From positions 248,001-312,000 of the IMG/VR virus record IMGVR_UViG_3300032288_004964: DNA of 64,000 nt. The stretch is one strand, 5' to 3'. A program made the translations under genes and the position numbers. This document shows positions 1 through 33,785 of the stretch, in pieces (position 1 is the stretch's first letter; every line of letters starts with the position of its first letter). The notes beneath the pieces were generated by a model, which was given only the letters and a program-made list of their open reading frames with translations, made no database searches and was not told the DNA's origin.

Positions 1-3000
1 AATCCATCAACACTTACTGCTACAAGACAAGAAACTGATGATGTCATAGATGTTATAATGATATCATTAGCATGAGCCGTATATTGTCTACTTGCGGTTA
101 TGTTAGATCCTAAAATAGAAGATCCTGTCATACCATTTGTAGTATTATTACATCCACCAATTATAGAACCAAATGGTGCATTTGAAGTATTACAATAACC
201 CCCACCTATAGCAGAATAAGATGAGCAATATCCAGAAATTGTATTTTGTTGACCACCTCCTATTGTTGAAAATGATGAATTAGTACCTGATATTGTATTT
301 GCTATACCACCTCCTATTGTTGAATTAATTGAAGAATACCCAGAGATTGTATTTGAATTACCACCATTTATAGTTGAGTGATACGAATAATAACCTGAGA
401 TTGTATTTTGTTGACCACCACCTATATTTGAGTTATTTGAATATTGACCACTTATTGAGTTTAATGATCCACCATTTATAGTTGAGTTGTATGAGTTGAA
501 TCCAGATATTGTATTTTGTTGACCACCTCCTACTGTTGAACTATATGAATTAAATCCAGATATTGTATTTAATGTACCACCGCTTATAGTTGATCTATAT
601 GAATTTGTACCAGATATTACGTTTTGAACACCTCCGCTTATAGTTGAGCAATGTGAATAAGTACCACATATTTTGTTTAAGCGTCCGCCTCCTATTGTTG
701 AATCTATTGAGCAGTATCCAGATATTTCGTTTTGTCTACCACCAGATATAGTTGATTGATGAGAGAATTGACCTGAGATTGTATTTTGACATCCACCACT
801 TATAGTTGAAGAGTTACTAGTAGCTCCAGAGATAATATTACAAGAACCTCCACTTATTGTTGAATAATATGAAATATTTCCAGAGATTAAATTACAATAT
901 CCACCGCTTATAGTTGAAATAGTAGAAGTATTACCAGAGATTGTATTAAGTTTACCACCACCTATAAATGATTGATATGAGTAAAGACCAGAAACTATAT
1001 TATAATAACCACCACTTATAGTTGAAAAACATGAATTGGTACCAGAAATTGAATTAGATCTACCACCGCTTATAGTTGAATATTCCGAATTAATTCCAGA
1101 TATTATATTGGCGTTTCCTCCTCCTATTGCTGAAAAAAATGAGTTAGAACCAGAGATTGTATTACAAGAACCTCCTCCTATTGTCGAATTATCTGAATTA
1201 GGACCAGATATTGTGTTCGTCTGTCCACCGGATATAGTAGAGTAATATGAATTAATTCCAGAAATTGTATTATCACATCCACCACTTATAGTTGATTGAT
1301 ATGAATTTGTACCTGAAATTTTATTTAATTGACCACCAGATATAGTGGAATAATAAGAAGATTTACCAGAGATTGTATTAGTACTACCACCACCTATAGC
1401 TGAGTAATATGAACATTCTCCAGAGATTGTATTTGTTAGACCACCACTTATTGTAGATCTATATGAATTTGTACCTGAAATTATATTATTATAACCCCCA
1501 CCTATAGTAGAAGAATCTGAATTATATCCTGATATTGTATTAGTACCACCACCACTTATAGTTGATTGATATGAATAACAACCAGAGATTGTATTAGTAC
1601 TACCACCACTTATAGTTGATTTTTGTGAGTAAAAACCAGAGATTGTATTAGTACTACCACCACTTATAGTTGATTTTTGTGAATAATATCCAGATATTGT
1701 ATTTTGCTGACCACCTCCTATAGTTGATAAGCACGCACTGTAGTATGATGAAACTGTATTACAACATCCACCACTTATAGTTGATAAACATGAACTCTCT
1801 ATACAATTACAATAACCACCACTTATAGTTGAACAATTTGAGCTAGATATATAATTAAAATAACCACCACTTATAGTTGATCTATATGAATAAGAGCAGA
1901 TCATATTTGCTTCACCACCACTTATAGTTGATAAGCATGAGTCAGTTATACAATTATTCCAACCGCCGCCTATATTAGAGTAATTTGATGCTCTTATTGT
2001 ATTAGAGACTCCACCACTTATAGTTGATAACCATGAAGAACTACATATTGTATTAAATTGACCACCACCTATAGCAGATCTAAGAGATCCGTCACATATT
2101 GTATTACTAGAACCACCAACTATATTAGATGCTAATGAGTTTGAAATTATATTTTGGCTACCACCTGATATAGTTGAGGTGGAACCTGAACTTGTTCCGC
2201 TTATTACATTAAGTTGACCACCTGATATAGTTGATGATCCTGAATTTGTTCCAGATATTGTATTATTTCTTCCACCACCTATAGTAGACCAACAAGAACT
2301 TGTAGCTGATATTATATTATTACAACCACCACTTATAGTGGATTGACGAGAAGAACTAGATATTGTATTAGAATTACCACCACTTACCGTTGAGCAAGCA
2401 CCAGCTGCACTATTACTTAATCCACATCTTTCAGTAGATCCAAGTCCCGAACCTAAAACAATAATTGCTGATGCTGATAATCCTGGACCAGTTGGACCTT
2501 GTATACCTTGTGGACCTTGTGGACCCGGAGATCCTTGAGATGCTAAAAGTGCCCAACTTATAGTATCAATATCTGGTGATGATGTTGTTGGTCCGACTGG
2601 ACTTAAACAAAACCAAGATGCACTTGCATACCCAACTGCATCATTAATTGAATATGATGCTCCACTTGACCAAGATCCCTGCCAAGTTAAACCAGCAGGA
2701 CCTACTGGACCAGCAACACCTTGAGGTCCTATTGGACCTTGTGCACCAATTGAGCCGCTAGTTCCAGATGTGCCAGTTGTTCCAGATGTGCCAGATGTAC
2801 CTGTTGTACCGGATGTTCCACTCGTACCTGATGTTCCAGTTGTACCGGAAGTACCACTTGTTCCATTACTACCATCAGTACCATCTATACCAGATAATCC
2901 AGATGTTCCTGAAGTACCAGATGTTCCTGAAGTACCAGATGTACCGGAAGTGCCATTAGTACCATTAGTTCCAGTAGCTCCGGTTATGGTAACATAAGCA

Positions 3001-3848
3001 CCTGTTAAATTAACCCACCATTGACTATAAGTATTACCAACAGATTCTGAATAGTTAACTACTATTGCCATTGTTCCTGAAATAGGATCATAAGAATCTA
3101 CTTCACCAATCATATATCCACCATAAGTATCTACAACATAATCATCTATGTATAAACCAGGAAAATAATCAAACATAACGACTGACTGGCCATATGAATA
3201 AGCCAACCCAGGCTGAACTTGAAAATTAACAACATATCCAACACCAGGTACTTCAATAGTTGTACTTGATGTACCTCTATATCTATCACCTACTGGACCT
3301 GTTGCTCCGGTAGGACCTTGTAATCCTATTGATCCTGTAAATCCTTGAGGACCAGTAGGACCAGATATCCAATATCCAGATAGGTTTACATACCATTGAC
3401 TATAGGTGTTACCAACAGATTCAGAATAATTAACAACTAATGATATAGATCCTGTTATTTTATCATAAGAATCTACTTCACCAATAATATATCCACCGTA
3501 AGTATCTACAGTATAGTCATCTACATATAGTCCTGGGAAATAATCAAACATAACAACAGACTGACCATATGTATATGCTAAATCAGGTTGAATATTAAAG
3601 TTAATTACACTACCAACTAAAGGAACTTCTATTGTATTACTTGATGTGCCTCTATATCTATCACCAAATCCAGTTGCTCCCGTGGGACCAATACCACCAC
3701 TAGTAGCAGTTGATCCAATTGGGGTAATAACTCCAAATTGGTCTTTTTGTTTTAAAATATTATCTACATCATATGCAACTAAATAACCAGTTGAAGGTGT
3801 AGCTGCTGTAGTTAAAGACATTGTATTCCCAAAAAGTATAGAACTCAT
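1..3848 (-). CDS. Large tail-fibre/adhesin-like protein, 3'-truncated by the window edge; duplicated ~95-aa domain, collagen-like GxY and GTS repeats, ~18-aa STISGGxxNTISG repeats
   Basis: ATG at 3848 (MSSILFGNTMSL...); frame read as open to the window start, so it is absent from the ORF track; AATATATA motif upstream. Confidence 0.8.
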   Translation of the reverse strand, partial: MSSILFGNTMSLTTAATPSTGYLVAYDVDNILKQKDQFGVITPIGSTATSGGIGPTGATGFGDRYRGTSSNTIEVPLVGSVINFNIQPDLAYTYGQSVVMFDYFPGLYVDDYTVDTYGGYIIGEVDSYDKITGSISLVVNYSESVGNTYSQWYVNLSGYWISGPTGPQGFTGSIGLQGPTGATGPVGDRYRGTSSTTIEVPGVGYVVNFQVQPGLAYSYGQSVVMFDYFPGLYIDDYVVDTYGGYMIGEVDSYDPISGTMAIVVNYSESVGNTYSQWWVNLTGAYVTITGATGTNGTNGTSGTSGTSGTSGTSGTSGLSGIDGTDGSNGTSGTSGTTGTSGTSGTSGTTGTSGTSGTTGTSGTSGSIGAQGPIGPQGVAGPVGPAGLTWQGSWSSGASYSINDAVGYASASWFCLSPVGPTTSSPDIDTISWALLASQGSPGPQGPQGIQGPTGPGLSASAIIVLGSGLGSTERCGLSNSAAGACSTVSGGNSNTISSSSRQSTISGGCNNIISATSSCWSTIGGGRNNTISGTNSGSSTISGGQLNVISGTSSGSTSTISGGSQNIISNSLASNIVGGSSNTICDGSLRSAIGGGQFNTICSSSWLSTISGGVSNTIRASNYSNIGGGWNNCITDSCLSTISGGEANMICSYSYRSTISGGYFNYISSSNCSTISGGYCNCIESSCLSTISGGCCNTVSSYYSACLSTIGGGQQNTISGYYSQKSTISGGSTNTISGFYSQKSTISGGSTNTISGCYSYQSTISGGGTNTISGYNSDSSTIGGGYNNIISGTNSYRSTISGGLTNTISGECSYYSAIGGGSTNTISGKSSYYSTISGGQLNKISGTNSYQSTISGGCDNTISGINSYYSTISGGQTNTISGPNSDNSTIGGGSCNTISGSNSFFSAIGGGNANIISGINSEYSTISGGRSNSISGTNSCFSTISGGYYNIVSGLYSYQSFIGGGKLNTISGNTSTISTISGGYCNLISGNISYYSTISGGSCNIISGATSNSSTISGGCQNTISGQFSHQSTISGGRQNEISGYCSIDSTIGGGRLNKICGTYSHCSTISGGVQNVISGTNSYRSTISGGTLNTISGFNSYSSTVGGGQQNTISGFNSYNSTINGGSLNSISGQYSNNSNIGGGQQNTISGYYSYHSTINGGNSNTISGYSSINSTIGGGIANTISGTNSSFSTIGGGQQNTISGYCSSYSAIGGGYCNTSNAPFGSIIGGCNNTTNGMTGSSILGSNITASRQYTAHANDIIITSMTSSVSCLVAVSVDG
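150..2400 (-). repeat. Degenerate ~54-bp coding tandem repeat (beta-helix/YadA-head-like motif)
   Basis: Recurrent gattgtatt...ccaccacttatagttga with ~54-nt period, e.g. near-identical units at ~1587-1695. Confidence 0.85.
2755..2980 (-). repeat. 9-bp coding repeat encoding (GTS)n
   Basis: gttccagat/gtaccagat units; the + strand VPD ORFs are its shadow. Confidence 0.85.
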
Positions 3849-3928
3849 GTATAAGATTTATTTTATTATAGTGTATATATTATTTTATTAAATCCTTTTT
3901 ATTTTTTATCTTTGTAAAAAGAAATAAA

Positions 3929-6406: not shown

Positions 6407-6502
6407 TGCGGGGTAGAGAAGTGGTCAACTCGCTAGGCTCATTTTAGACTATCTAATGAAGAAATAACCTAGAGATCACAGGTTCGAATCCTGTCCCCGC
6501 TA
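6407..6502 (+). tRNA. Initiator-type tRNA-Met(CAT) with 23-nt insertion in the anticodon loop
   Basis: TGCGGGG/CCCCGCT acceptor with 1:72 mismatch; CTAGG-CTCAT[23 nt]AA-CCTAG; GGTTCGAATCC. Confidence 0.8.
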
Positions 6503-6590
6503 CAAAAAGGAAGATTTGAAACCCAACAAAAAAAGATTATATAAACGGGGTTCTTTTGAAATTCATTTCTTCTGAAGAATTAAAAAAATA

Positions 6591-6623
6591 TTTGGTGATT
6601 AATAAAAATCACCTTATATTTGT
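6591..6623 (+). promoter_or_regulatory. Bacteroidota-type sigma promoter (-33 TTTG, -7 TATATTTG) driving leader 1 and tRNA cluster 1
   Basis: tttggtgattaataaaaatcaccttatatttgta. Confidence 0.75.
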
Positions 6624-6656
6624 AAAAGAAAATTAAAACATATTAAAAATTAAAAA

Positions 6657-6737
6657 ATGAACACAACTACTAACATATTGTCTTATTATTATGAGGAGAA
6701 AAACCCTTCTATCAGACAAGTATTGTTTGTGTTGTAA
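6657..6737 (+). CDS. Attenuator leader peptide 1 (Tyr/Glu sensor) MNTTTNILSYYYEEKNPSIRQVLFVL
   Basis: TAT TAT TAT GAG GAG run; followed by a terminator and Tyr/Glu tRNAs. Confidence 0.85.
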   Translation: MNTTTNILSYYYEEKNPSIRQVLFVL

Positions 6738-6758
6738 TTATTATTATAATATTAAATG

Positions 6759-6795
6759 AAACCCAGTCTGATTATCAGACTGGGTTTTTTGTTTT
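6759..6795 (+). terminator. Attenuator terminator 1
   Basis: aaacccagtctga-tta-tcagactgggttt plus U tract; ATCAGAC at 6711-6717 in the leader is complementary to the 5' arm. Confidence 0.85.
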
Positions 6796-6815
6796 ATATA
6801 TGTTCTTTGAAAATT

Positions 6816-6906
6816 GGGAGTATAACGTCAGCGGAATGTAAGCCGCCCCTCGTAAATATATGGCGTATGGCTTGAGGTAACTAGTGTTCGAATCCTGGTA
6901 CTCCCA
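6816..6906 (+). tRNA. Atypical tRNA-Tyr-like gene (irregular anticodon arm containing GTA)
   Basis: GGGAGTA/TACTCCC acceptor identical to tRNA-Tyr at 7660; TTCGAATCC T-loop. Confidence 0.5.
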
Positions 6907-6911
6907 CAAAT

Positions 6912-6983
6912 GGTCTTGTCGACTAATGGTTAGGTCAACACCCTTTCAAGGTGTAGATGCGGGTTCGATCCCCGTCAAGACTA
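6912..6983 (+). tRNA. tRNA-Glu(TTC)
   Basis: Cloverleaf; acacc-CTTTCAA-ggtgt. Confidence 0.9.
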
Positions 6984-6992
6984 CAAATAAAT

Positions 6993-7078
6993 GCTACGGT
7001 ATGCAAACCGGAATAAGCGACCAGACTTTCAATCTGGACATCGAAAGATGTGTGCGGGTTCGAGCCCCGTCCGTAGTA
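6993..7078 (+). tRNA. tRNA with TTC (Glu) anticodon and long variable arm
   Basis: ccaga-CTTTCAA-tctgg; acatc-gaaa-gatgt V-arm; A73. Confidence 0.8.
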
Positions 7079-7081
7079 CAA

Positions 7082-7223
7082 AAATATCAGGAGTACCTGT
7101 CGTAGAAAGTTAATCACTTTCCCTGATATTTATAAAACTCAATGAAGTAAGTGACTTTAGGTAGTACCGACAGGAGGGTGAATTTGATTAAGTTCTTTGG
7201 GGTTCGAATCCCACCATTGAGTT
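7082..7223 (+). ncRNA. Hairpin plus tRNA-like element (acceptor stem and T-arm) with potential mutual pairing
   Basis: actcaatg/cattgagt stem; GGTTCGAATCC; cctgtcg(7096)/cgacagg(7168) complementarity. Confidence 0.45.
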
Positions 7224-7228
7224 GTTTT

Positions 7229-7312
7229 GGGAATGCGCCAACGTTGGAGAGTTGGGCTAGTCTGTAAAACTAGTGGCTTATGCCTGAGTGAGTTCGATTC
7301 TCACCATTCCCA
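7229..7312 (+). tRNA. tRNA-Tyr(GTA)
   Basis: ctagt-CTGTAAA-actag; long V-arm. Confidence 0.85.
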
Positions 7313-7316
7313 CAAG

Positions 7317-7541
7317 ATGAAGATAATAGATTTTTTAATACAAGTAGGTACCTTCAAAAGTAAAGGTGAGGCAATTAGAGCTGTAAAAAACAAAATGACT
7401 TTGAAGATAAGAGGTACTGATGAAAGTAATGTTCAATATAAAGATATCATAATAGATGAAAGTAATATAAATGGTTATATCTATATTGAAAATGAAAAGG
7501 TTTATGTAACAAATTTTGATATAAAAGATTTGGTAGATTGA
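7317..7541 (+). CDS. Small S4-like RNA-binding-domain protein
   Basis: True start likely ATG 7317 after the tRNA; IIDFLIQVGTFKSKGEAIRAV resembles the S4 motif of the TyrRS C-terminus. Confidence 0.55.
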   Translation: MKIIDFLIQVGTFKSKGEAIRAVKNKMTLKIRGTDESNVQYKDIIIDESNINGYIYIENEKVYVTNFDIKDLVD

Positions 7542-7578
7542 ACTTTTTTATTTATCTTTGTAAAACAAATATAAAAAT

Positions 7579-7651
7579 GCACCGTTAGTGAAGCGGCTAA
7601 CACGTCTCCCTTTCACGGAGAAGATCATCGGTTCGAACCCGATACGGTGTA
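7579..7651 (+). tRNA. tRNA-Glu(TTC)
   Basis: tctcc-CTTTCAC-ggaga; own TTTG...TATCTTTG promoter at ~7529-7562. Confidence 0.9.
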
Positions 7652-7659
7652 CAAATTTT

Positions 7660-7739
7660 GGGAGTATCGCATAGCGGCAATTGCAGTAGACTGTAAATCT
7701 ACCCTTTCGAGTTCGAAGGTTCGAGTCCTTCTACTCCCA
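7660..7739 (+). tRNA. tRNA-Tyr(GTA)
   Basis: gtaga-CTGTAAA-tctac. Confidence 0.9.
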
Positions 7740-7743
7740 CAAA

Positions 7744-8476: not shown

Positions 8477-8560
8477 ATGAAAAATTTACATAACATATCA
8501 ATAGCGATTATAGCGGGCGGCGCGGGGAGCGACTGTCATTGGCTGAGTTATGTGTTGTAA
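8477..8560 (+). CDS. Attenuator leader peptide 2 (Ile/Ala/Gly sensor) MKNLHNISIAIIAGGAGSDCHWLSYVL
   Basis: ATA/GCG/GGC/GGG codon run; followed by a terminator and Ile/Gly/Ala tRNAs. Confidence 0.85.
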   Translation: MKNLHNISIAIIAGGAGSDCHWLSYVL

Positions 8561-8587
8561 ATAATAAATATATTTATAATAATATTG

Positions 8588-8618
8588 AAACCCAGTCACA
8601 AAATGACTGGGTTTTTTT
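8588..8618 (+). terminator. Attenuator terminator 2
   Basis: aaacccagtca-caaaa-tgactgggttt plus U tract; tggctgagtt (8540-8549) can pair with the 5' arm. Confidence 0.85.
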
Positions 8619-8627
8619 AATTTATAT

Positions 8628-8701
8628 AGGTGAGTAGCTTAGATGGTAAAAGCATGTGTCTTATACACACAAGATAGTGGGATCGTTACCCACCTCACCT
8701 A
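8628..8701 (+). tRNA. tRNA-Ile(TAT)
   Basis: tgtgt-CTTATAC-acaca; T-loop ATCGTTA. Confidence 0.85.
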
Positions 8702-8929
8702 CTGAAAAAAATAAAAATGAAAGGAAAAATGAAAAGTTGAAATTGAATTGTTGGTTTATTTATAGATGTGTTAATAGTAATATCTATTTTCACCGTGTTA
8801 AATAAGAATATTAAATGTCGTATTTATGAAAATGAATATGAGACATGGGTACCTGACTTAAACGGTAACATACAACGTAAAGAAACTAAAACAATTGTTA
8901 TTAACTTCTTAAGAAGATTAGGATAACAA

Positions 8930-9003
8930 GCAATAGTGGTGTTAATGGTTTAGCACATCTGACTTCCAATCAGAAGGTGTCGGTTCGAATCCGGTCTAAT
9001 GCA
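8930..9003 (+). tRNA. tRNA-Gly(TCC)
   Basis: tctga-CTTCCAA-tcaga. Confidence 0.85.
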
Positions 9004-9050
9004 CAAAGTGAGAAAACACTTAAAAACCATCCCACCAGGATGTAAAAATC

Positions 9051-9133
9051 GCGGGTGTAGTATAGTGGAGGCGAAAGCCGTATTATATCGGTCTTCCAAA
9101 CCGAAGATGTGAGTTCGATTCTCATCACCCGCT
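9051..9133 (+). tRNA. tRNA-Gly(TCC) with D-loop hairpin insertion
   Basis: tcggt-CTTCCAA-accga; ggc-gaaa-gcc in the D-loop. Confidence 0.85.
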
Positions 9134-9146
9134 CAAATAATGTAAT

Positions 9147-9222
9147 GGGGTTACATGTACCAAGGCTTAGGCGAGACTGCTTTGCAAGCAATCTGTGGTG
9201 GGTTCGATTCCCACTAGCTCCA
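9147..9222 (+). tRNA. tRNA-Ala(TGC)
   Basis: TTTGCAA loop; G3.U70 pair; atypical D arm. Confidence 0.75.
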
Positions 9223-9234
9223 CAAAAAAAACAA

Positions 9235-9307
9235 GCGAAAGTAGCTCAGTTGGTAGAGCGTAACCTTGCCAAGGTTAAGGTCGCGGGTTCGAGACCCGTC
9301 TTTCTCT
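9235..9307 (+). tRNA. tRNA-Gly(GCC)
   Basis: taacc-TTGCCAA-ggtta. Confidence 0.85.
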
Positions 9308-9308
9308 C

Positions 9309-9452
9309 AAGATAGTAGCAATGTAAGAGTGTTACTTCGTATTTCAAACGACTAGTTCAGGTTCGAATCCTGGGTTCCGCTCAAAATAATATAAGCGGAA
9401 TTAGTGTAACGGCAGCACAGTAAAAACACACTCAGCAAATTTTCTCTATCTT
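9309..9452 (+). ncRNA. YrlA/Y-RNA-like permuted tRNA mimic
   Basis: Long closing stem (agatag/ctatct, gagtgt/acactc, ttact/agtaa) enclosing T-arm, loop-closed acceptor stem, then D-arm. Confidence 0.6.
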
Positions 9453-9456
9453 ATTA

Positions 9457-9529
9457 GGGCCAGATGCCAACGGCAGGTCAACTCGCTTGCACCGAGATTG
9501 TTTGGGTTCGATTCCCACTGTGTCCACCA
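9457..9529 (+). tRNA. Atypical tRNA-Ala(TGC), encoded CCA
   Basis: ctcg-CTTGCAC-cgag; G3.U70; bulged acceptor stem. Confidence 0.65.
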
Positions 9530-11729: not shown

Positions 11730-12317
11730 ATGATTAAAATTTTAGGTAAAATCCCAAAAGGTGAGTTTGGTTTAGCATGTTCCGGTGGAGTTGATTCTAT
11801 GGCTATTCTTGATTTCCTTATTACCGGGAATCATATTCCACATATTTTATACTTTAATCACAATACAAAACATGGTGATGATGCTGAAAAGTTTATTACT
11901 GATTATTGTAAAGAAAAAAATCTTAAATTAACAATCGGTAGAACATATCTTAAACCAACTTCAAATAAGGAAAAGATTTGGAGTAATGCTCGTTATGAAT
12001 TCTTTTCAAAATTTGATTTTCCTATCATGACTTGTCACCACTTAGATGATTGTGTAGAAACATATATCTTCTCTTGTCTGAGAGGATTTCAATCTGTTAT
12101 CCCATACTCTAAAGGTAATGTGATTAGACCGTTCTTATTGAATGAAAAATCGGTATTTACTAAATGGTGCATTGATAAGGAAGTTCCATTTATTCAAGAT
12201 GATTCAAATGATTGCTTAGACTATTCAAGAAATAGAATTAGACATCAAATTGTACCTGAGTCTTTATTAGTGAACCCAGGATTGAAAACAGTTGTTAAGA
12301 AAATGGTATCAAAATAA
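11730..12317 (+). CDS. tilS: tRNA(Ile)-lysidine synthetase (short form)
   Basis: PP-loop SGGVDS, HHLDD, IRPFL, DDSN...SRNRIRH motifs. Confidence 0.85.
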   Translation: MIKILGKIPKGEFGLACSGGVDSMAILDFLITGNHIPHILYFNHNTKHGDDAEKFITDYCKEKNLKLTIGRTYLKPTSNKEKIWSNARYEFFSKFDFPIMTCHHLDDCVETYIFSCLRGFQSVIPYSKGNVIRPFLLNEKSVFTKWCIDKEVPFIQDDSNDCLDYSRNRIRHQIVPESLLVNPGLKTVVKKMVSK

Positions 12318-13890: not shown

Positions 13891-14001
13891 ATGACAACAA
13901 TTAATTTAAATATGAACATGAATACACTGACAGTGGTGAATAATACGTTATGTATTAGACCTTGTGAGGGTTTTGATCTATTTAAAGGATTTGTCAATTA
14001 A
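13891..14001 (+). CDS. Attenuator leader peptide 3 MTTINLNMNMNTLTVVNNTLCIRPCEGFDLFKGFVN
   Basis: First 23 codons use only M,T,I,N,L,V,C,R, the amino acids of the downstream tRNA cluster. Confidence 0.85.
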   Translation: MTTINLNMNMNTLTVVNNTLCIRPCEGFDLFKGFVN

Positions 14002-14029
14002 TGTAACAAATTTTTAATAAAAGATACTC

Positions 14030-14062
14030 AAAACCCTCAGTCAAAAACTGAGGGTTTTTTTA
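14030..14062 (+). terminator. Attenuator terminator 3
   Basis: aaaaccctcagt-caaaa-actgagggtttt; perfect 12-bp antiterminator tgagggttttga(13965)/tcaaaaccctca(14028). Confidence 0.9.
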
Positions 14063-14075
14063 TTATAAGAAATTT

Positions 14076-14148
14076 GGACTGGAAGCTAGTATGGTACAGC
14101 TGCGGCCTGTTAAGCCGAGGATAGTGGGATCGTTACCCACCCAGTCCG
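14076..14148 (+). tRNA. tRNA-Asn(GTT)
   Basis: cggc-CTGTTAA-gccg; T-loop ATCGTTA. Confidence 0.8.
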
Positions 14149-14164
14149 CAAAAAGAAATAAAAA

Positions 14165-14243
14165 CGGTGCGTACCGAGCCACACTGATAATGTGGATATT
14201 CGTAATGGTGTTGCAAATGTAGGTTCAAATCCTATCGTACCGA
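14165..14243 (+). tRNA. D-armless tRNA-like gene with GAT (Ile) anticodon and long variable region
   Basis: cggtgcg/cgtaccg; ccaca-CTGATAA-tgtgg; GGTTCAAATCC. Confidence 0.55.
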
Positions 14244-14249
14244 CAAAAT

Positions 14250-14322
14250 GGTTCCTTCGTTCAACTGGACAGGACATCGGTCTTCTAAACCGAGGATATG
14301 GGTTCGAATCCCGTAGGGACTA
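14250..14322 (+). tRNA. tRNA-Arg(TCT)
   Basis: tcggt-CTTCTAA-accga. Confidence 0.9.
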
Positions 14323-14384
14323 CTGAGAGAGACCGTTTATAGTTTTTAACAGGACACAAGAGTGGAAGCGTAGAAAACTAAAAT

Positions 14385-14468
14385 GCCGGAGTGGCGAAAT
14401 GGTTAATACGCGCTAGCCTTAGAAGCTAGTGTCTATATGACGTGTGGGTTCGAGTCCCACCTCCGGTA
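14385..14468 (+). tRNA. tRNA-Leu(TAG)
   Basis: ctagc-CTTAGAA-gctag; long V-arm. Confidence 0.9.
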
Positions 14469-14500
14469 CTGAAGTGAAACTAAAGTTCACTACTAAAAAT

Positions 14501-14586
14501 TACTGTGTTGCCGTAGTGGCCGAACGGTCCAGACTGTTAATCTGGTGACGAATAGTCCAACGTAGGTTCGAATCCTACCACAGTAG
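14501..14586 (+). tRNA. tRNA-Asn(GTT) with long variable arm
   Basis: ccaga-CTGTTAA-tctgg; G73. Confidence 0.8.
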
Positions 14587-14591
14587 CAAAA

Positions 14592-14664
14592 GCCCCCGTA
14601 GCTTAATCGGGAAAGCACTTGTTTTACATACAAGATAGAGTCGGATCGTAACCGGCCGGGGGTA
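14592..14664 (+). tRNA. tRNA-Val(TAC)
   Basis: cttgt-TTTACAT-acaag; T-loop ATCGTAA. Confidence 0.85.
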
Positions 14665-14671
14665 CAAATAT

Positions 14672-14744
14672 TGTCAGTTAGCTCATTTGGTAGAGCACTT
14701 GTCTGATACACAAGAGGTGGTGGGATCGTAACCCGCACTGACAA
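14672..14744 (+). tRNA. tRNA-Ile(GAT)
   Basis: cttgt-CTGATAC-acaag; T-loop ATCGTAA. Confidence 0.85.
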
Positions 14745-14750
14745 CAAAAT

Positions 14751-14833
14751 GGTACTGTGGCCGAGCGGTGTCGAAAGACGAGAGGCAGTAGTCTGCAAAA
14801 CTACTCACACTGGTTCGAATCCAGTCAGTACCT
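14751..14833 (+). tRNA. tRNA-Cys(GCA) with D-loop hairpin insertion
   Basis: gtagt-CTGCAAA-actac; U73; gtc-gaaa-gac in the D-loop. Confidence 0.85.
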
Positions 14834-14845
14834 CAAAAAGAGTTC

Positions 14846-14917
14846 GCTCTCTAAGCATTAATGGTGATGCGCTAGTCTTGTAAACTAGATAAATCGGATC
14901 GTTACCGGTAGAGAGCT
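14846..14917 (+). tRNA. tRNA-Thr(TGT)
   Basis: ctagt-CTTGTAA-actag; T-loop ATCGTTA. Confidence 0.85.
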
Positions 14918-14922
14918 CAAAT

Positions 14923-15068
14923 CGGTAGGACCCTATATTCTGTGGTAACTTCTAGAGAAGCCACAAGATGAATCGGTCTGGGTTAAAAACCAAACTTGGT
15001 TATTTGATATTCTAGAAATCATCATTTAATTAAGATTGGGAAGGTAGGTTCGAATCCTACCCTACTGT
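14923..15068 (+). ncRNA. 146-nt tRNA-like RNA (acceptor stem and T-arm enclosing a multi-hairpin core)
   Basis: cggtagg/cctactg; gtagg-TTCGAAT-cctac; no recognisable anticodon arm. Confidence 0.5.
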
Positions 15069-15075
15069 CAAATAT

Positions 15076-15147
15076 TGTTCTGTAGCTCAATGGGAGAGCA
15101 CTTCCTTGACATGGAAGAGGTAGTCGGATCGTTACCGACCAGAACAA
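15076..15147 (+). tRNA. tRNA-Val(GAC)
   Basis: cttcc-TTGACAT-ggaag; T-loop ATCGTTA. Confidence 0.85.
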
Positions 15148-15148
15148 C

Positions 15149-15267
15149 TTAATGGATGGTGATTGAAAGAGTTACTTCGTTTAATGGAAAAACAATTGAC
15201 TTCTAATCAGTGCACGGTGGTTCGATTCCACCAGTATAAAACCTCTTTCTACCTTTTCCTCCATTAA
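15149..15267 (+). ncRNA. Y-RNA-like element carrying D, anticodon (TCT, Arg) and T arms on a long closing stem
   Basis: ttaatgga/tccattaa and gaaagag/ctctttc stems; shares GTTACTTCG...AGTA(T)AAAAC with the 9309 element. Confidence 0.55.
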
Positions 15268-15269
15268 AT

Positions 15270-15349
15270 GCTGATGTGGCACAGTGGCGACTGCACCAAC
15301 CTTGTAAGTTGGAACACAAACATCGGGGGTTCGAGTCCCTCCATCAGCT
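15270..15349 (+). tRNA. tRNA-Thr(TGT) with extended variable region
   Basis: ccaac-CTTGTAA-gttgg. Confidence 0.8.
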
Positions 15350-15356
15350 CAAAAAT

Positions 15357-15443
15357 GCTTCTGTGGCGAAATTGGCAGCACGCGAGGGACTTAAAATCCC
15401 TTGGACCGGAAAGTCCGTATCGGTTCGAGTCCGATCAGAAGTA
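15357..15443 (+). tRNA. tRNA-Leu(TAA)
   Basis: aggga-CTTAAAA-tccct. Confidence 0.9.
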
Positions 15444-15449
15444 CTAAAA

Positions 15450-15521
15450 TGCGATATAGCTTAATGGAAGAGCGGCTCCAGACATAGGGAGTTAGTCTTG
15501 GTTCGATTCCAGGTATCGCGA
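15450..15521 (+). tRNA. tRNA-Met-like with 8-nt anticodon loop (AGA-CAT-AG)
   Basis: gctcc-AGACATAG-ggagt; normal D and T arms. Confidence 0.6.
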
Positions 15522-15526
15522 CAAAT

Positions 15527-15596
15527 GGCGTGGCTTAGTGGAAAAGAGCAGTCTCTCATAAGGACTGATAAGTGGGTTCGAACCCCATACACGCTA
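15527..15596 (+). tRNA. Atypical tRNA with CAT anticodon (Met or Ile2)
   Basis: agtct-CTCATAA-ggact; short acceptor/D connector. Confidence 0.6.
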
Positions 15597-16247
15597 CTAA
15601 TTAATTTTATTAGGATATCCTAACTTAGCCTTATTAACTATGTTTATATGTTCAACATTTTTTGGGAATAATCTTGGATGATAATTATCATATTGGTCTA
15701 AAAACTTAAAATCTTCTTTTTTAAGTTTCATTCCATCAAATCTATTTAAGAAGTTTATAAATGATTGTAAAGATTCATCTACTAAACCAAATACAGTATT
15801 ACTTCTATCAAAATTAGAACCATAAGAAGTATATTGAATTACTTTTATTTTATTCGGTTCTTCAATACTAAATTCACAGGTCATGGCATCACCATATGTT
15901 ATATCAATAGTTAATGTTATATTACCATCTTTGTCATCTTTAGCAAAATAAATATCAAATTCTAAAGTATCGGGTGTTCCCCATATCTCTCCTGATTCTT
16001 TACTACCAAGTGGTGTAGAAGCATAAGTTATCTGAACCATGTCAGAGTGTAACATTATATTATCTTTCTTAAATTTATAAAGATTATTGTGATAATTTAT
16101 TGTAATGAATTCTGATAGTTCGTTTTCCCATCTCTTATCATAGATAGTATTTAAAGTATTAGTCTTACTATCTATATTAGGTTTTATATTACCATTAGCT
16201 TTAATTGTAGCTTCAATATCTTCATTAAATCTTCTTAAATATTTCAT
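15597..16247 (-). CDS. Hypothetical protein, paralog of 22092..22820
   Basis: Shared PDxLxFDI...IDxTYGDxMxxEFxIxxPNK motif; MKYLRRFNE start. Confidence 0.75.
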   Translation of the reverse strand: MKYLRRFNEDIEATIKANGNIKPNIDSKTNTLNTIYDKRWENELSEFITINYHNNLYKFKKDNIMLHSDMVQITYASTPLGSKESGEIWGTPDTLEFDIYFAKDDKDGNITLTIDITYGDAMTCEFSIEEPNKIKVIQYTSYGSNFDRSNTVFGLVDESLQSFINFLNRFDGMKLKKEDFKFLDQYDNYHPRLFPKNVEHINIVNKAKLGYPNKIN

Positions 16248-22820: not shown

Positions 22821-22987
22821 AAAATCTACCTTATATTTGTGAAACAATTGGGATGGGAAACGATTCAGATACAAGTCTCAATTTTTTTTTACAAAAATAA
22901 TTTGGCAGATATAAAACTTTTTTCTATATTTGTATAAAATAAGAACAAATAACAAAAAGAGAGAATAACTTTATAATATATACTGAA

Positions 22988-23086
22988 ATGAAAAACTTAA
23001 ACTTAAATATCGTTAACCCGCAACCTCAAGTTGTAATCGATCAGGATCCTGATACGATAGGGGCTAACTATGTGGTTTTAAGTTAA
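22988..23086 (+). CDS. Attenuator leader peptide 4 (Pro/Gln/Asp sensor) MKNLNLNIVNPQPQVVIDQDPDTIGANYVVLS
   Basis: PQPQ..DQDPD run; followed by a terminator and Asp/Pro/Gln tRNAs. Confidence 0.85.
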   Translation: MKNLNLNIVNPQPQVVIDQDPDTIGANYVVLS

Positions 23087-23110
23087 AGAATAATATTAAC
23101 TATGAAACGT

Positions 23111-23150
23111 AACCCAGTTAGTCGAAAGATTAACTGGGTTTTTTGTTTTT
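23111..23150 (+). terminator. Attenuator terminator 4
   Basis: aacccagttagtc-gaaa-gattaactgggtt plus U tract; ggctaact (23062-23069) pairs with agttagtc. Confidence 0.85.
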
Positions 23151-23223: not shown

Positions 23224-23297
23224 GGTTCGTTAGTAGAGTTGGTTACAATATCGCACTGTCACTGCGAAGGTCACGGGTTCGAATCCCGTACGAACCG
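23224..23297 (+). tRNA. tRNA-Asp(GTC)
   Basis: tcgca-CTGTCAC-tgcga. Confidence 0.9.
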
Positions 23298-23302
23298 CAA
23301 AA

Positions 23303-23374
23303 GGTCTTGTCGTCCAATGGTAGGATAACCCGTTGTCTGCGGGAAGGTTGTGGGTTCGAATCCCATCAGGACCG
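23303..23374 (+). tRNA. tRNA-Asp(GTC)
   Basis: cccg-TTGTCTG-cggg; G73. Confidence 0.8.
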
Positions 23375-23383
23375 CTAAAATTT

Positions 23384-23456
23384 CGGGGTGTAGCGCAGTT
23401 GGTAGCGCGCCTGGTTTGGGACCAGGAGGTCGTCAGTTCGAGCCTGGCCACTCCGA
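23384..23456 (+). tRNA. tRNA-Pro(TGG)
   Basis: cctgg-TTTGGGA-ccagg. Confidence 0.9.
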
Positions 23457-23469
23457 CAAAAAATTAAAA

Positions 23470-23554
23470 CGAGATGTAGCCTAGAGGTTTCCGTATGGAT
23501 AAAGGCACTTGGTTTGGGACCAAGACGACGCAGGTTCGAATCCTGCCATCTCGA
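23470..23554 (+). tRNA. tRNA-Pro(TGG) with D-loop hairpin insertion
   Basis: cttgg-TTTGGGA-ccaag; tcc-gtat-gga in the D-loop. Confidence 0.85.
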
Positions 23555-23585
23555 CAAAGAAAAAAAATATTAATAAATAGAAATT

Positions 23586-23639
23586 ATGAGAACAACAACA
23601 CAATACCAACAACAACAACAAATTAATCCAACAGATTGA
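23586..23639 (+). CDS. Attenuator leader peptide 5 (Gln sensor) MRTTTQYQQQQQINPTD
   Basis: Six CAA codons; followed by a terminator, two tRNA-Gln and glnS. Confidence 0.9.
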   Translation: MRTTTQYQQQQQINPTD

Positions 23640-23667
23640 TAATGGTATCGTATTGTTTAAACTTTAC

Positions 23668-23702
23668 AAACCCTACTCAATCTGATTGAGTAGGGTTTTT
23701 TT
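23668..23702 (+). terminator. Attenuator terminator 5
   Basis: aaaccctactcaat-ctg-attgagtagggttt plus U tract; cagattga(23632)/tcaatctg(23677) antiterminator. Confidence 0.9.
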
Positions 23703-23704: not shown

Positions 23705-23778
23705 TGTCCGGTGGCGAAATTGGTAGACGCACTAAGCTTTGACCTTAGTTTTTGTAGGTTCGAACCCTACCCGGACAG
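23705..23778 (+). tRNA. tRNA-Gln(TTG)
   Basis: ctaag-CTTTGAC-cttag. Confidence 0.85.
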
Positions 23779-23785
23779 CAACAAT

Positions 23786-23857
23786 TGGAAAATAGTATAA
23801 TGGTTATTATTTCTGACTTTGAATCAGAAGATACAGGTTCGATCCCTGTTTTTCCAA
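23786..23857 (+). tRNA. tRNA-Gln(TTG)
   Basis: tctga-CTTTGAA-tcaga. Confidence 0.85.
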
Positions 23858-23876
23858 CTAAAAAAATATAAAAATT

Positions 23877-25511
23877 ATGAATTTCATAGAAGAAAAAATA
23901 TTAGAAAAAGGAAATCTCGATAAGTTAAAACTTCGTTTTCCACCAGAACCAAATGGGGCTATACTAAACGATGGTAGAGTTGTCGGTGGTCTTCACTTAG
24001 GACATGCTAAATCCATTATACTAAATTTTGGATTAGCAGAAAAGTATAATGCTACATGTGTGTTAAGGTTTGATGATACAAATCCAACTACTGAAAGAAA
24101 AGAGTTTGTAGATTCAATGATTGAGGATATCAAATGGCTTGGTTATACTCCAAGTGAAATCAGATACACATCTGATTATTTTGATTTTCTTTATGAATGT
24201 GCTGTTACTTTAATTAAGAAAGGATTAGCTTATGTTGATGATTCAACATCTGAAGAAATTGCTAACTTAAAAGGAACTCCAACTTCAGTTGGTAAAGACT
24301 CACCTTATAAATCTAGAAGTATAGAAGAAAACTTAGACTTATTTAATAGAATGAGATTAGGTGAATTCTATGAAGGTTCTAAAATCTTGAGAGCCAATAT
24401 TGATATGACTTCTCCTAATATGATTTTAAGAGATCCGGTTCTTTACAGAATAATATCTAAGTCACATCACAGAACTGGTGATACTTGGAAGATTTATCCA
24501 ATGTATGACTTTGCTCATCCACTTTCAGATTATAAAGAAGGTATCACTGATTCCCTTTGTACTTTAGAATTTGAAGTTCATAGACCTTTATATATGTGGG
24601 TCTTAGAAAATTGTGATTTAGAAAATTCTTTACCAGAAGAAACTGAGTTTGCTCGTTTGAACATTGACTATACGGTTATGTCAAAGAGAAAACTAAAAAG
24701 ATTAGTTGAAGAAGGATTTGTTGATGGGTGGAATGATCCAAGAATGCCAACTATTTCTGGTTTAAGAAGAAGAGGTTTTACTCCAAACGCTATTAAAGAT
24801 TTCTGCGATAGAATTTCTGTTACCAGAAAAGAATCAGTTGTTTCTTATTTGCTTTTAGAAGAATGTTTAAGAACTGATTTGAATATAGTTACCAATAGAT
24901 TAATGGGTGTTATGGATCCAGTTAAGTTAGTTATTACTAATTGGGATAGCGGAACTGAAATGGTTGAAGTTGAAAATAATCCTGGCGATGAAAGTGCTGG
25001 AGTGAGAATGATTCCTTTTAGTGGTGAATTATTTATTGAAAGAGAAGATTTCAGAGAAGAAGCCAATAAAAAATTTCATAGATTGAAATTAGGTGGAGAA
25101 GTAAGACTAAAAGGAGCTTATGTTATTATGGCTAACGAAGTTATCAAAGATGAATTTGGGGAAATCACTGAGATCAGATGTACTTATGATCCTTTAACAA
25201 GATCGGGTATGACTTTTGAAAGAAAGATTAAAGGAACTATTCACTGGGTATCTGCTGAACACGGAGTTAGAATGGATGTAAATGAATATGATAGATTGTT
25301 CAATGATGAATCACCAGATAAAAATGAAGATGATTTTATCAATTATATCAACCCAGATTCACTTATAATTAATGATAAGGCAATCTTTGAACCTCACGTT
25401 TTAAACGTCAAGGCACCAGTTCAAATGATGAGAAAGGGGTATTATATTTTAGATACTGACGGTAAAAGTTTCAATAAAACGGTAAGTTTGAAAGAAGGTT
25501 GGGTAGGTTAA
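23877..25511 (+). CDS. glnS: Glutaminyl-tRNA synthetase
   Basis: RFPPEPNG, HLGH, RFDDTNP, YPMYDFAH, MSKRK, GWNDPRMPT. Confidence 0.95.
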   Translation: MNFIEEKILEKGNLDKLKLRFPPEPNGAILNDGRVVGGLHLGHAKSIILNFGLAEKYNATCVLRFDDTNPTTERKEFVDSMIEDIKWLGYTPSEIRYTSDYFDFLYECAVTLIKKGLAYVDDSTSEEIANLKGTPTSVGKDSPYKSRSIEENLDLFNRMRLGEFYEGSKILRANIDMTSPNMILRDPVLYRIISKSHHRTGDTWKIYPMYDFAHPLSDYKEGITDSLCTLEFEVHRPLYMWVLENCDLENSLPEETEFARLNIDYTVMSKRKLKRLVEEGFVDGWNDPRMPTISGLRRRGFTPNAIKDFCDRISVTRKESVVSYLLLEECLRTDLNIVTNRLMGVMDPVKLVITNWDSGTEMVEVENNPGDESAGVRMIPFSGELFIEREDFREEANKKFHRLKLGGEVRLKGAYVIMANEVIKDEFGEITEIRCTYDPLTRSGMTFERKIKGTIHWVSAEHGVRMDVNEYDRLFNDESPDKNEDDFINYINPDSLIINDKAIFEPHVLNVKAPVQMMRKGYYILDTDGKSFNKTVSLKEGWVG

Positions 25512-33695: not shown

Positions 33696-33785
33696 CAAAA
33701 AATATTTTGAAAAACATTTGGTAGAATAAAAAAAAGTTTCTATCTTTGTAAAACAAAATTAAAAGGTATTATATAAAAAACATAT

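What the first reader, a model, noticed from the sequence alone, without database searches (positions are those of the whole stretch)
6657..7312. Attenuator 1: YYYEE leader ahead of a Tyr/Glu-only cluster
TAT-TAT-TAT-GAG-GAG at 6684-6698. ATCAGAC (6711-6717) can pair with terminator arm GTCTGAT, while the overlapping AGACAA can instead pair with upstream TTGTCT. All identifiable downstream tRNAs are Tyr or Glu. A second Glu+Tyr pair (7579-7739) has its own promoter with no leader, suggesting basal plus inducible copies (inference).
Basis: partly seen in the sequence, partly recalled or inferred. Interest (0 to 1): 0.85.

Follow-up and report, generated by a model that had tools for sequence, protein, structure and literature searches.

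The report
Leader-peptide attenuators controlling phage tRNA genes
A huge phage places a tiny test gene and a stop-transcription hairpin ahead of each block of its tRNA genes. The test gene is written in exactly the codons those tRNAs read, so the phage probably makes a given tRNA only when the cell runs short of it; this control logic is not described for tRNA genes in the literature I could search.

Summary
Positions 6591-6794 hold a Bacteroidetes-type promoter and a 26-codon ORF (MNTTTNILSYYYEEKNPSIRQVLFVL). They also hold a 7-bp antiterminator (6711-6717 with 6766-6772) and a 14-bp intrinsic terminator. Glu and Tyr tRNA genes follow.

It is not an isolated case. The window has five such units: Y/E, I/A/G, N/R/L/V/I/T/M/C, D/P/Q and poly-Q. 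The poly-Q unit precedes two tRNA-Gln genes and a glutaminyl-tRNA synthetase. All are conserved in two 630-640 kb Bacteroidetes "Mahaphages".

Across 232 sequences I found 96 assessable terminator-to-tRNA junctions. Of these, 86 have a short ATG-ORF ending 10-45 nt before the hairpin, against 20% at random positions. Leader composition tracks the downstream tRNA set (z about 18; 0 of 20,000 permutations). All 20 amino acids are enriched 1.6-8.2 fold when their tRNA lies downstream. Some matches are isoacceptor-specific (Arg CGT vs AGA, Ile ATA vs ATT).

The cultured Cellulophaga phage phi4:1 has three units, so the idea is testable. Eight literature searches and the huge-phage paper gave no prior description.

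Verdict: a new variant of ribosome-mediated attenuation, of high interest.

The parts
6591..6622 (+). Unit 1 promoter, Bacteroidetes type (TTTG ... TAnnTTTG)
   Evidence: Motif scan. The same consensus (TTTGGnnGAT...TTATATTTG) precedes other units and genes in the window.
6657..6737 (+). Unit 1 leader ORF, MNTTTNILSYYYEEKNPSIRQVLFVL
   Evidence: Homologous ORFs with Y/E runs occur in six other phage contigs.
6684..6698 (+). Regulatory codons TAT TAT TAT GAG GAG
   Evidence: Best-segment score p = 0.003 against small ORFs.
6678..6683 (+). Region 1 (TTGTCT), a possible anti-antiterminator partner of 6714-6719
   Evidence: Pairs in the full-length minimum-energy fold. Not conserved across the family.
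6711..6719 (+). Region 2. Positions 6711-6717 (ATCAGAC) form the antiterminator strand.
   Evidence: Pairs with 6766-6772 in nascent RNA. In the family, 87.8% of cells are paired against 14-33% for slid controls, and two pairs show compensatory changes.
6758..6794 (+). Intrinsic terminator: 14-bp hairpin 6758-6788 plus T tract
   Evidence: Hairpin energy -20.0 kcal/mol. 97.6% paired in the family, with three compensatory pairs.
6816..6908 (+). tRNA-Tyr-like element not called by ARAGORN or Rfam (aberrant or insert-bearing)
   Evidence: By eye it shares acceptor ends with tRNA-Tyr 7660-7740. Only unreliable low-threshold calls were obtained.
6912..6984 (+). tRNA-Glu (TTC)
6993..7079 (+). tRNA-Glu (TTC), 87 nt
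7229..7313 (+). tRNA-Tyr (GTA)
7317..7541 (+). 74-aa ORF starting 4 nt after tRNA-Tyr, probably in the same operon; identity unclear
   Evidence: Below-threshold Pfam match to the TyrRS C-terminal domain (E 0.006). Weak PDB match to an ASCH domain (E 0.012). AlphaFold2 pLDDT 54.
7529..7560 (+). Second promoter, with no leader
7579..7740 (+). tRNA-Glu (TTC) and tRNA-Tyr (GTA) directly behind the second promoter
8477..8615 (+). Unit 2: leader MKNLHNISIAIIAGGAGSDCHWLSYVL (8477-8560) and terminator 8587-8615
   Evidence: Score p = 0.0016.
8628..9526 (+). Unit 2 tRNAs: Ile(TAT), Gly(TCC) x2, Ala(TGC)-like, Gly(GCC), Ala(TGC), plus unassigned tRNA-like pieces
   Evidence: Anticodons at 9051-9133 and 9147-9225 were read by eye.
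13891..14058 (+). Unit 3: leader MTTINLNMNMNTLTVVNNTLCIRPCEGFDLFKGFVN (13891-14001) and terminator 14030-14058
   Evidence: An 11-bp antiterminator, TGAGGGTTTTG, pairs with the terminator 5' arm.
14076..15599 (+). Unit 3 tRNAs: Asn, Arg(TCT), Leu, Asn, Val, Ile(GAT), Cys(GCA, 14751-14833), Thr, Val, Thr, Leu, Met and odd ones
   Evidence: The Cys anticodon was read by eye.
22901..23140 (+). Unit 4: promoter 22901-22932, leader MKNLNLNIVNPQPQVVIDQDPDTIGANYVVLS (22988-23086), terminator 23111-23140
23224..23555 (+). Unit 4 tRNAs: Asp, Asp, Pro, Ser
23586..23698 (+). Unit 5, internal to the unit 4 operon: leader MRTTTQYQQQQQINPTD (23586-23639) and terminator 23668-23698
   Evidence: Homologous poly-Q leaders occur in six other contigs.
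23705..25511 (+). Unit 5 cargo: tRNA-Gln x2 (23705-23858) and a glutaminyl-tRNA synthetase (23877-25511)
   Evidence: Pfam tRNA-synt_1c 3e-93 with both C-terminal domains. The same tRNA-Gln then GlnRS order is seen in L004, L005 and L060; in L062 GlnRS lies about 750 nt beyond the called Gln tRNAs.

Best explanation
Unit 1 is a ribosome-mediated transcription attenuator that gates a block of phage tRNA-Tyr and tRNA-Glu genes. It is one of five such units in this window.

Proposed sequence of events:
1. Transcription starts at the promoter (6591-6622).
2. A ribosome begins translating the 26-codon leader.
3. If charged tRNA-Tyr or tRNA-Glu (host plus phage pool) is scarce, the ribosome stalls on TAT TAT TAT GAG GAG (6684-6698).
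4. Region 2 (6711-6717) is then left free. It pairs with the loop-proximal half of the terminator 5' arm (6766-6772) as soon as that arm is transcribed.
5. The terminator cannot nucleate, and RNA polymerase reads on into the tRNA genes.
6. If decoding is fast, the ribosome runs over region 2 and sits at the stop codon, 20 nt before the hairpin. The 14-bp terminator then forms and transcription ends at about 6790.

The result would be negative feedback on the supply of exactly those tRNAs. Because each leader lists the codons of all tRNAs behind it, shortage of any one would switch on that block.

Shown: the sequence anatomy, its conservation, the leader/tRNA correspondence and the alternative pairings.
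Inferred: translation of the leader, the polarity of the switch, and tRNA supply as the signal.
For: Anatomy in the window:
- Promoter, ORF and terminator.
- Alternative folds, and folds with a ribosome mask.

Five units in the window, each leader matching its own tRNAs:
- In the leader-by-set matrix for the first four units (unit 5 was found later), diagonal p is 0.0016-0.005 and off-diagonal pairings are not significant.
- The first 23 residues of the unit 3 leader all belong to its tRNA set, once tRNA-Cys at 14751-14833 is included.

Conservation:
- The four units examined there (1-4) are conserved in LR756502 and LR745206 with synonymous codon variation; poly-Q leaders like unit 5's precede their tRNA-Gln genes too.

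Generality:
- 86 of 96 terminator-to-tRNA junctions carry a short ATG-ORF chosen by a rule blind to the tRNAs, against 20.2% of random positions (p 2e-48).
- With one representative for each of 49 leader clusters, the score is 379.5 against 130.4 +/- 14.1 under permutation, and 0 of 20,000 permutations reach it.
- All 20 amino acids are enriched when their tRNA is downstream.

Geometry is tightly constrained:
- Stop codon to terminator is 18-33 nt, median 26.
- Region 2 begins a median 6 nt after the regulatory run.

Antiterminators:
- Each unit's own leader pairs with its own terminator arm better than other leaders do (Wilcoxon p 1.9e-5).
- In the unit 1 family, 87.8% of cells are paired against 14-33% for slid controls, with compensatory changes.

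Isoacceptor level:
- The unit 2 leader uses ATA and has Ile(TAT) downstream. The unit 3 leader uses ATT and has Ile(GAT) downstream.
- In phage phi4:1, leader A uses CGT and precedes Arg(ACG), while leader B uses AGA and precedes Arg(TCT).
- Overall, 159 of 247 informative codons are readable by downstream anticodons, against 127 expected.

The poly-Q leader also gates a GlnRS, which parallels the known pheST attenuator.
Against: - There are no expression, ribosome-profiling or termination data. Everything rests on sequence.
- At equilibrium the terminator state is much more stable (-31.1 vs -17.1 kcal/mol), so the switch works only kinetically.
- Region 2 starts only about 6 nt after the last regulatory codon. 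A ribosome stalled on the final codons would cover it, so only stalls earlier in the run would give read-through.
- The classical 1:2 pairing is not conserved.
- There is no Shine-Dalgarno sequence. That is expected for Bacteroidetes from general knowledge, but it means leader translation is unproven.
- 24 of 49 cluster representatives score below my 'strong' cut-off. Causes may include incomplete tRNA calls or false units.
- Two tRNA-like elements in unit 1 could not be assigned.
Confidence: 0.8

Rival explanations
1. The device is the same, but it senses amino-acid starvation (uncharged tRNA) rather than tRNA abundance, as in classical biosynthetic attenuators. The tRNA cargo would then be a by-product of a general starvation response.
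For: Stalling reports charged tRNA, so it cannot by itself separate lack of amino acid from lack of tRNA. Unit 5 also controls a GlnRS, which is a charging function.
Against: Making more tRNA does not relieve amino-acid starvation. Leaders mirror the exact tRNA set, down to isoacceptors: Arg CGT vs AGA and Ile ATA vs ATT. This fits a sensor of decoding capacity.
Confidence: 0.1
2. The polarity is reversed. Smooth translation of the leader, made possible by the phage tRNAs, promotes read-through, giving positive feedback, and stalling causes termination.
For: Region 2 begins only a median 6 nt after the regulatory run. A ribosome stalled on the last regulatory codons would mask the antiterminator.
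Against: Leader stop codons lie 18-33 nt upstream of the hairpin, so a translating ribosome never reaches the terminator to melt it. Most regulatory codons lie more than 12 nt upstream of region 2, so most stalls leave region 2 free.
Confidence: 0.05
3. Sensing is independent of translation. The codon run would pair directly with tRNA anticodons, like a multi-specifier T-box.
For: The codon run is complementary to the anticodons of the downstream tRNAs by construction.
Against: No T-box or other Rfam family matches. The runs are always in frame in an ATG-ORF with a stop at a fixed distance from the hairpin. Homologues differ by synonymous codons.
Confidence: 0.03
4. It is coincidence. The hairpin is an ordinary terminator or insulator, and YYYEE is a chance run in a spurious ORF.
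For: AT-rich DNA is full of short ORFs: 20% of random positions pass my ORF rule.
Against:: 0 of 20,000 permutations reach the observed association, five matched units sit in one window, and the units are conserved across unrelated phages.
Confidence: 0.01

Closest known systems
Leader-peptide transcription attenuators of amino-acid operons (trpL, hisL, leuL, pheL, thrL, ilvL)
   Same: All share a short leader ORF with a run of regulatory codons, an intrinsic terminator, an overlapping antiterminator, and a ribosome stall that decides between the two.
   Different: The cargo here is tRNA genes, so the sensed molecule is the product itself. Leaders are multi-amino-acid 'barcodes' of up to 8-12 residue types. 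The 1:2 anti-antiterminator is not conserved. The units are phage-borne, sit behind Bacteroidetes-type promoters, and can lie inside tRNA operons (unit 5). There is no sequence match to the Rfam leader families.
pheST (phenylalanyl-tRNA synthetase) attenuator of E. coli (from general knowledge)
   Same: A leader-peptide attenuator that controls a component of the translation apparatus for the same amino acid. Unit 5 (poly-Q leader, then tRNA-Gln x2, then GlnRS) is the nearest parallel.
   Different: pheST controls only the synthetase. Here tRNA genes are the first, and usually the only, cargo.
T-box riboswitches
   Same: Both couple the state of a specific tRNA to read-through of a terminator ahead of translation-related genes.
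   Different: A T-box binds uncharged tRNA directly, without translation, through one specifier codon and a conserved T-box motif. Neither is present here.
Anabaena trn operon (26 tRNA genes) repressed by TrcR (PMC10272220; only the start of its abstract was seen)
   Same: It is a supplementary tRNA array that is off by default and conditionally activated.
   Different: Control there is by a protein repressor at the promoter, not by codon-matched leader peptides.

Membership tests
Ribosome-mediated (leader-peptide) transcription attenuators | Short translatable ORF between promoter and terminator | tested here: met
   ORF 6657-6737 lies behind promoter 6591-6622. 86 of 96 junctions have such an ORF, against 20% at random positions.
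Ribosome-mediated (leader-peptide) transcription attenuators | Run of regulatory codons cognate to what the operon supplies | tested here: met
   YYYEE precedes Tyr and Glu tRNAs. The family-wide association has z about 18.
Ribosome-mediated (leader-peptide) transcription attenuators | Intrinsic terminator between the leader and the regulated genes | tested here: met
   14-bp hairpin plus T tract at 6758-6794. 97.6% paired in homologues.
Ribosome-mediated (leader-peptide) transcription attenuators | Mutually exclusive antiterminator using the terminator 5' arm, placed downstream of the regulatory codons | tested here: met
   Own-versus-other complementarity gives p 1.9e-5.
Ribosome-mediated (leader-peptide) transcription attenuators | Anti-antiterminator (1:2) pairing that gives termination when the ribosome has left | tested here: inconclusive
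   It is present in the window. It is not conserved in the unit 1 family: 58.8% paired, 128 of 500 shuffles as good.
Ribosome-mediated (leader-peptide) transcription attenuators | Cargo is amino-acid biosynthesis or aminoacyl-tRNA synthetase genes | tested here: not met
   The cargo of unit 1 is tRNA genes. Only unit 5 adds a GlnRS.
Ribosome-mediated (leader-peptide) transcription attenuators | Read-through rises when the cognate charged tRNA is limiting | not testable with these tools
   This needs reporter, Term-seq or in vitro transcription-translation assays.
Rfam leader families (His, Leu, Thr, Trp, Phe leaders) | Covariance-model match at gathering score | tested here: not met
   No hit at gathering score. 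Only sub-threshold terminator-driven hits appear at E up to 1.
T-box riboswitch | Stem I specifier loop and conserved T-box sequence (Rfam model) | tested here: not met
   No T-box match.

The most novel reading that the evidence does not exclude
Phage tRNA arrays may be organised as demand-responsive regulons. Each sub-array would be guarded by a codon 'barcode' leader that reports, isoacceptor by isoacceptor, whether the infected cell can still decode those codons. This would let a phage detect and repair loss of specific host tRNAs, for example after cleavage by anticodon-nuclease defences or host shut-off, while paying for only the tRNAs it needs. The same device may also exist in cellular genomes (see the Acidobacteriota tRNA-Cys lead).
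Probability: 0.35. Interest if true: 0.95.

Novelty: new variant of a known kind. Interest (0 to 1): 0.9.

Why it matters
Why phages carry tRNA genes, and how those genes are used, is a long-running question. Proposed answers include codon-usage compensation, replacement of degraded host tRNAs, and escape from tRNA-cleaving defences.

If these leaders work as attenuators, the phage itself tells us what its tRNAs are for. They would be switched on by failure to decode the matching codons, block by block.

This would also extend a textbook mechanism to a new class of cargo (RNA genes, with the product as the signal). It would explain the grouping of tRNAs within phage arrays. It would give natural, reprogrammable sensors of decoding capacity for single tRNA species. 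It would also re-annotate many 'hypothetical proteins' inside tRNA arrays, such as Phi4113_075, as leader peptides.

A cultured pair exists, Cellulophaga baltica and phage phi4:1, so the idea can be tested directly.

Tried and rejected
- Rfam at gathering score and at E up to 1: no known leader, T-box or other cis-regulatory family.
- An exact-pattern scan for the unit 2 leader in IMG/VR found only the window's own contig.
- ARAGORN at lowered thresholds on the odd tRNA-like pieces gave contradictory, unreliable calls. I did not use them. My first by-eye reading of 9051-9133 as Trp was wrong; the anticodon is Gly(TCC).
- Choosing the 'longest ORF' as leader mis-picked unit 5. I replaced it with a distance rule that is blind to the tRNAs.
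- The 1:2 anti-antiterminator as a conserved element is not supported.
- Equilibrium folding does not favour the antiterminator, so only a kinetic model is tenable.
- GluRS (16465-17922) was checked for a Glu leader. It has only a 46-aa hydrophobic ORF upstream and no attenuator.
- ORF 7317-7541: Pfam, PDB and AlphaFold2 were all inconclusive.
- Cellular control: the same terminator-plus-T-loop pattern in 120 genome loci gave only 11 junctions and 3 small ORFs.
- Eight literature searches and the huge-phage paper turned up no description of tRNA-gene attenuators. The library is incomplete, so this is absence of evidence only.
- The metagenome scan was not used, because the viral collection gave enough.

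Full report
**What is there**

The window is part of a 385-kb IMG/VR phage contig, IMGVR_UViG_3300032288_004964. It is AT-rich and carries about 30 tRNA genes and a GOLLD RNA. It also encodes GluRS, GlnRS and a TilS-like enzyme. Its nearest public relatives are LR756502 (642 kb) and LR745206 (635 kb). These are huge phages of the 'Mahaphage' clade, predicted to infect Bacteroidetes (PMC7162821). Promoters in the window fit the Bacteroidetes pattern TTTG...TAnnTTTG.

- A promoter motif lies at 6591-6622.
- It is followed by an ATG-ORF at 6657-6737 encoding MNTTTNILSYYYEEKNPSIRQVLFVL, with TAT TAT TAT GAG GAG at 6684-6698.
- A 14-pair hairpin at 6758-6788 and a T tract come next.
- The called tRNAs that follow are Glu, Glu and Tyr (6912-7313).
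- A second Glu+Tyr pair at 7579-7740 sits directly behind its own promoter, with no leader.

**Alternative RNA structures in unit 1**

- The full-length leader folds with TTGTCT (6678-6683) paired to AGACAA (6714-6719), plus the terminator: -39 kcal/mol, z -4.9.
- RNA ending before the terminator's 3' arm folds with ATCAGAC (6711-6717) paired to GTCTGAT (6766-6772): -17.1 kcal/mol, z -4.3.
- With a ribosome mask over the Tyr/Glu run, the same antiterminator forms in the nascent RNA. With the mask over region 2, it cannot form.
- At equilibrium the terminator state wins (-31.1 vs -17.1), so the choice must be kinetic.
- The antiterminator sequesters the loop-proximal 7 nt of the 5' arm, which is where the hairpin must nucleate.

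**It is one of five units in the window**

| Unit | Leader | Downstream cargo |
|---|---|---|
| 2 (8477-8615) | MKNLHNISIAIIAGGAGS... | Ile(TAT), Gly(TCC) x2, an Ala-like tRNA, Gly(GCC), Ala(TGC) |
| 3 (13891-14058) | MTTINLNMNMNTLTVVNNTLCIRP... | Asn, Arg(TCT), Leu, Val, Ile(GAT), Cys, Thr, Met |
| 4 (22988-23140) | ...NPQPQVVIDQDPD... | Asp, Asp, Pro, Ser |
| 5 (23586-23698) | MRTTTQYQQQQQINPTD | two tRNA-Gln, then a GlnRS gene 19 nt later |

- In unit 3, the first 23 residues all belong to the downstream tRNA set.
- Unit 5 lies inside the unit 4 operon.
- Sources.
- In a leader-by-tRNA-set matrix for the first four units (unit 5 was found later), scored against 628 small ORFs, only the diagonal is significant, at p 0.0016-0.005.

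**Conservation**

- LR756502 and LR745206 keep the four units examined (units 1-4); poly-Q leaders like unit 5's also precede their tRNA-Gln genes. The leaders have diverged but keep the same amino-acid sets, with synonymous codon changes.
- In the unit 1 family of seven contigs, antiterminator pairs are 87.8% intact, against 14-33% when the partner is slid. Two pairs carry compensatory changes.
- One example: ATCAGAC/GTCTGAT in the window becomes GTCAGAC/GTCTGAC in LR745206.
- The terminator is 97.6% paired in the same family.
- The arrangement poly-Q leader, tRNA-Gln, GlnRS recurs in L004, L005 and L060; in L062 GlnRS lies about 750 nt beyond the called Gln tRNAs.

**Generality**

Two pattern scans of IMG/VR, plus the window and the two large phages, gave 232 sequences. 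These contain 98 terminator-to-tRNA junctions, 96 of them with at least 150 nt of upstream sequence to assess.

- A rule blind to tRNA identity (an ATG-ORF of at least 10 aa, with its stop 10-45 nt before the hairpin) finds a leader at 86 of the 96 assessable junctions. The rate at random positions is 20.2% (p 2e-48).
- Many amino-acid sets not seen in the window appear:
  - MRNYTTYTKQYQPKGGKSQGQ... before Pro, Lys, Thr, Tyr, Gln, Glu
  - ...KHKHFSKSSKWF... before Phe, His, Lys, Trp
  - ...SSSRSSS... before Arg, Ser
  - ...LSLSLLSSLWS... before Leu, Ser, Trp
  - ...PQPQQHPQ... before Pro, His, Gln
- With one representative for each of 49 leader clusters, the summed best-segment score is 379.5. 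Permuting the tRNA sets gives 130.4 +/- 14.1, and 0 of 20,000 permutations reach the observed value.
- Every one of the 20 amino acids is 1.6-8.2 times more frequent in leaders whose block carries its tRNA.
- Each leader pairs with its own terminator arm better than other leaders do (p 1.9e-5).
- Geometry is tight. The stop codon lies 18-33 nt before the hairpin, and leaders are 15-46 aa long. Region 2 starts a median 6 nt after the regulatory run.

**Isoacceptor resolution**

- Among amino acids with several anticodon classes, 159 of 247 leader codons are readable by a downstream anticodon, against about 127 expected from codon usage. That is about 4 sd (my arithmetic).
- The unit 2 leader uses ATA and has Ile(TAT) downstream. 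The unit 3 leader uses ATT and has Ile(GAT) downstream.
- In Cellulophaga phage phi4:1, leader A uses CGT ahead of Arg(ACG), and leader B uses AGA ahead of Arg(TCT).

**A cultured system**

Cellulophaga phage phi4:1_13 (KT962245.1; host Cellulophaga baltica) splits its 23-gene tRNA array (22 ARAGORN-typed tRNAs plus one annotated pseudo-tRNA) into three units.

| Unit | Leader | Downstream tRNAs |
|---|---|---|
| A | MKIQRLHLQELEQPIISGGTGV | Pro, Glu, Gln, His, Leu, Leu, Arg |
| B | ...KKIKVQLTKTGITVIDKTKGARAY... (the annotated 'hypothetical protein' Phi4113_075) | Ala, Lys, Ile, Gly, Met, Asp, Thr, Val, Arg, Met |
| C | MKTNYCTYNNSNWSFSY... | Tyr, Ser, Asn, Trp, Phe |

**Mechanism and its status**

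The best-supported model is classical ribosome-mediated attenuation applied to tRNA genes. Slow decoding of the listed codons leaves region 2 free, so the antiterminator forms and the tRNAs are transcribed. Fast decoding lets the terminator form.

- The polarity is inferred from geometry. Stop codons never reach the hairpin, and most regulatory codons lie far enough upstream of region 2.
- Translation of the leaders, the response to tRNA supply, and the biological trigger (codon demand, host tRNA loss, or defence nucleases) are all untested.

**Comparison with what is known**

- It works like the trp/his/pheST attenuators.
- It fails the membership feature 'biosynthetic or synthetase cargo'.
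- It lacks a conserved 1:2 element.
- It matches no Rfam leader or T-box model.
- Eight full-text searches and the huge-phage paper gave no description of leader-peptide control of tRNA genes.

I therefore class it as a new variant of a known kind, of high interest. The literature check has limits, because the library is incomplete.

Noticed in passing
L323:5150-5410 (MAG of an uncultured Acidobacteriota bacterium, CAWIQN010000005.1): In a cellular genome of 57% GC, a small ORF (...ATACCCPCCYAS...) is followed by a hairpin terminator and a lone tRNA-Cys(GCA). This may be a cellular analogue of the phage tRNA attenuators. Compare the cysteine-responsive poly-Cys short ORFs of mycobacteria (bioRxiv 10.1101/834739, listed).
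   Followed up: partly
window 34430-34837 (probably extending upstream to about 33960): A GOLLD RNA (Rfam RF02032, 270 bits) lies behind its own promoter (33896-33927). It is flanked by unusual tRNA genes.
   Followed up: no
window 15450-15522, 33611-33696, 34845-34921: ARAGORN gives these tRNA-like genes four-base anticodons (acat, agta, attc), meaning 8-nt anticodon loops. A similar one is at L005:47365-47437. They could be frameshift-suppressor-like or aberrant tRNAs.
   Followed up: no
window 6407-6503 and 35000-35100: These tRNA genes are predicted to carry insertions or introns: Met(CAT) with a 23-nt insert and Gln(CTG) with a 14-nt insert. Several other tRNAs have D-arm insertions, for example Gly(TCC) at 9051-9133 and Cys(GCA) at 14751-14833.
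   Followed up: partly
window 9309-9457: A tRNA 3' half (T arm plus acceptor strand GGTTCCGC) is followed 12 nt later by a matching 5' half (GCGGAA... plus D arm). The order is that of a permuted tRNA gene, though it could instead be debris from a rearrangement.
   Followed up: no
window 7317-7541: A 74-aa ORF starts 4 nt after tRNA-Tyr, inside the Tyr/Glu operon. It has weak, conflicting similarities: TyrRS C-terminal domain (Pfam E 0.006, below cut-off) and an ASCH domain (PDB 3iuw, E 0.012). The AlphaFold2 model was too poor to use.
   Followed up: partly
window 11730-12317, 16465-17922, 23877-25511: The tRNA clusters lie among phage-encoded translation genes: a PP-loop (TilS-like) enzyme, a glutamyl-tRNA synthetase and a glutaminyl-tRNA synthetase.
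   Followed up: partly
window leaders at 6657, 8477, 13891, 22988; many loci: Most leaders share an N-terminal pattern, M-(K/R/N/T)-(T/N)-(I/L/M)-x-x-N-I. This suggests that the units are paralogues that spread by duplication, or that there is a constraint on translation initiation.
   Followed up: no
window 1-3900, minus strand: An open reading frame of at least 1285 codons runs off the start of the window. It was not examined.
   Followed up: no
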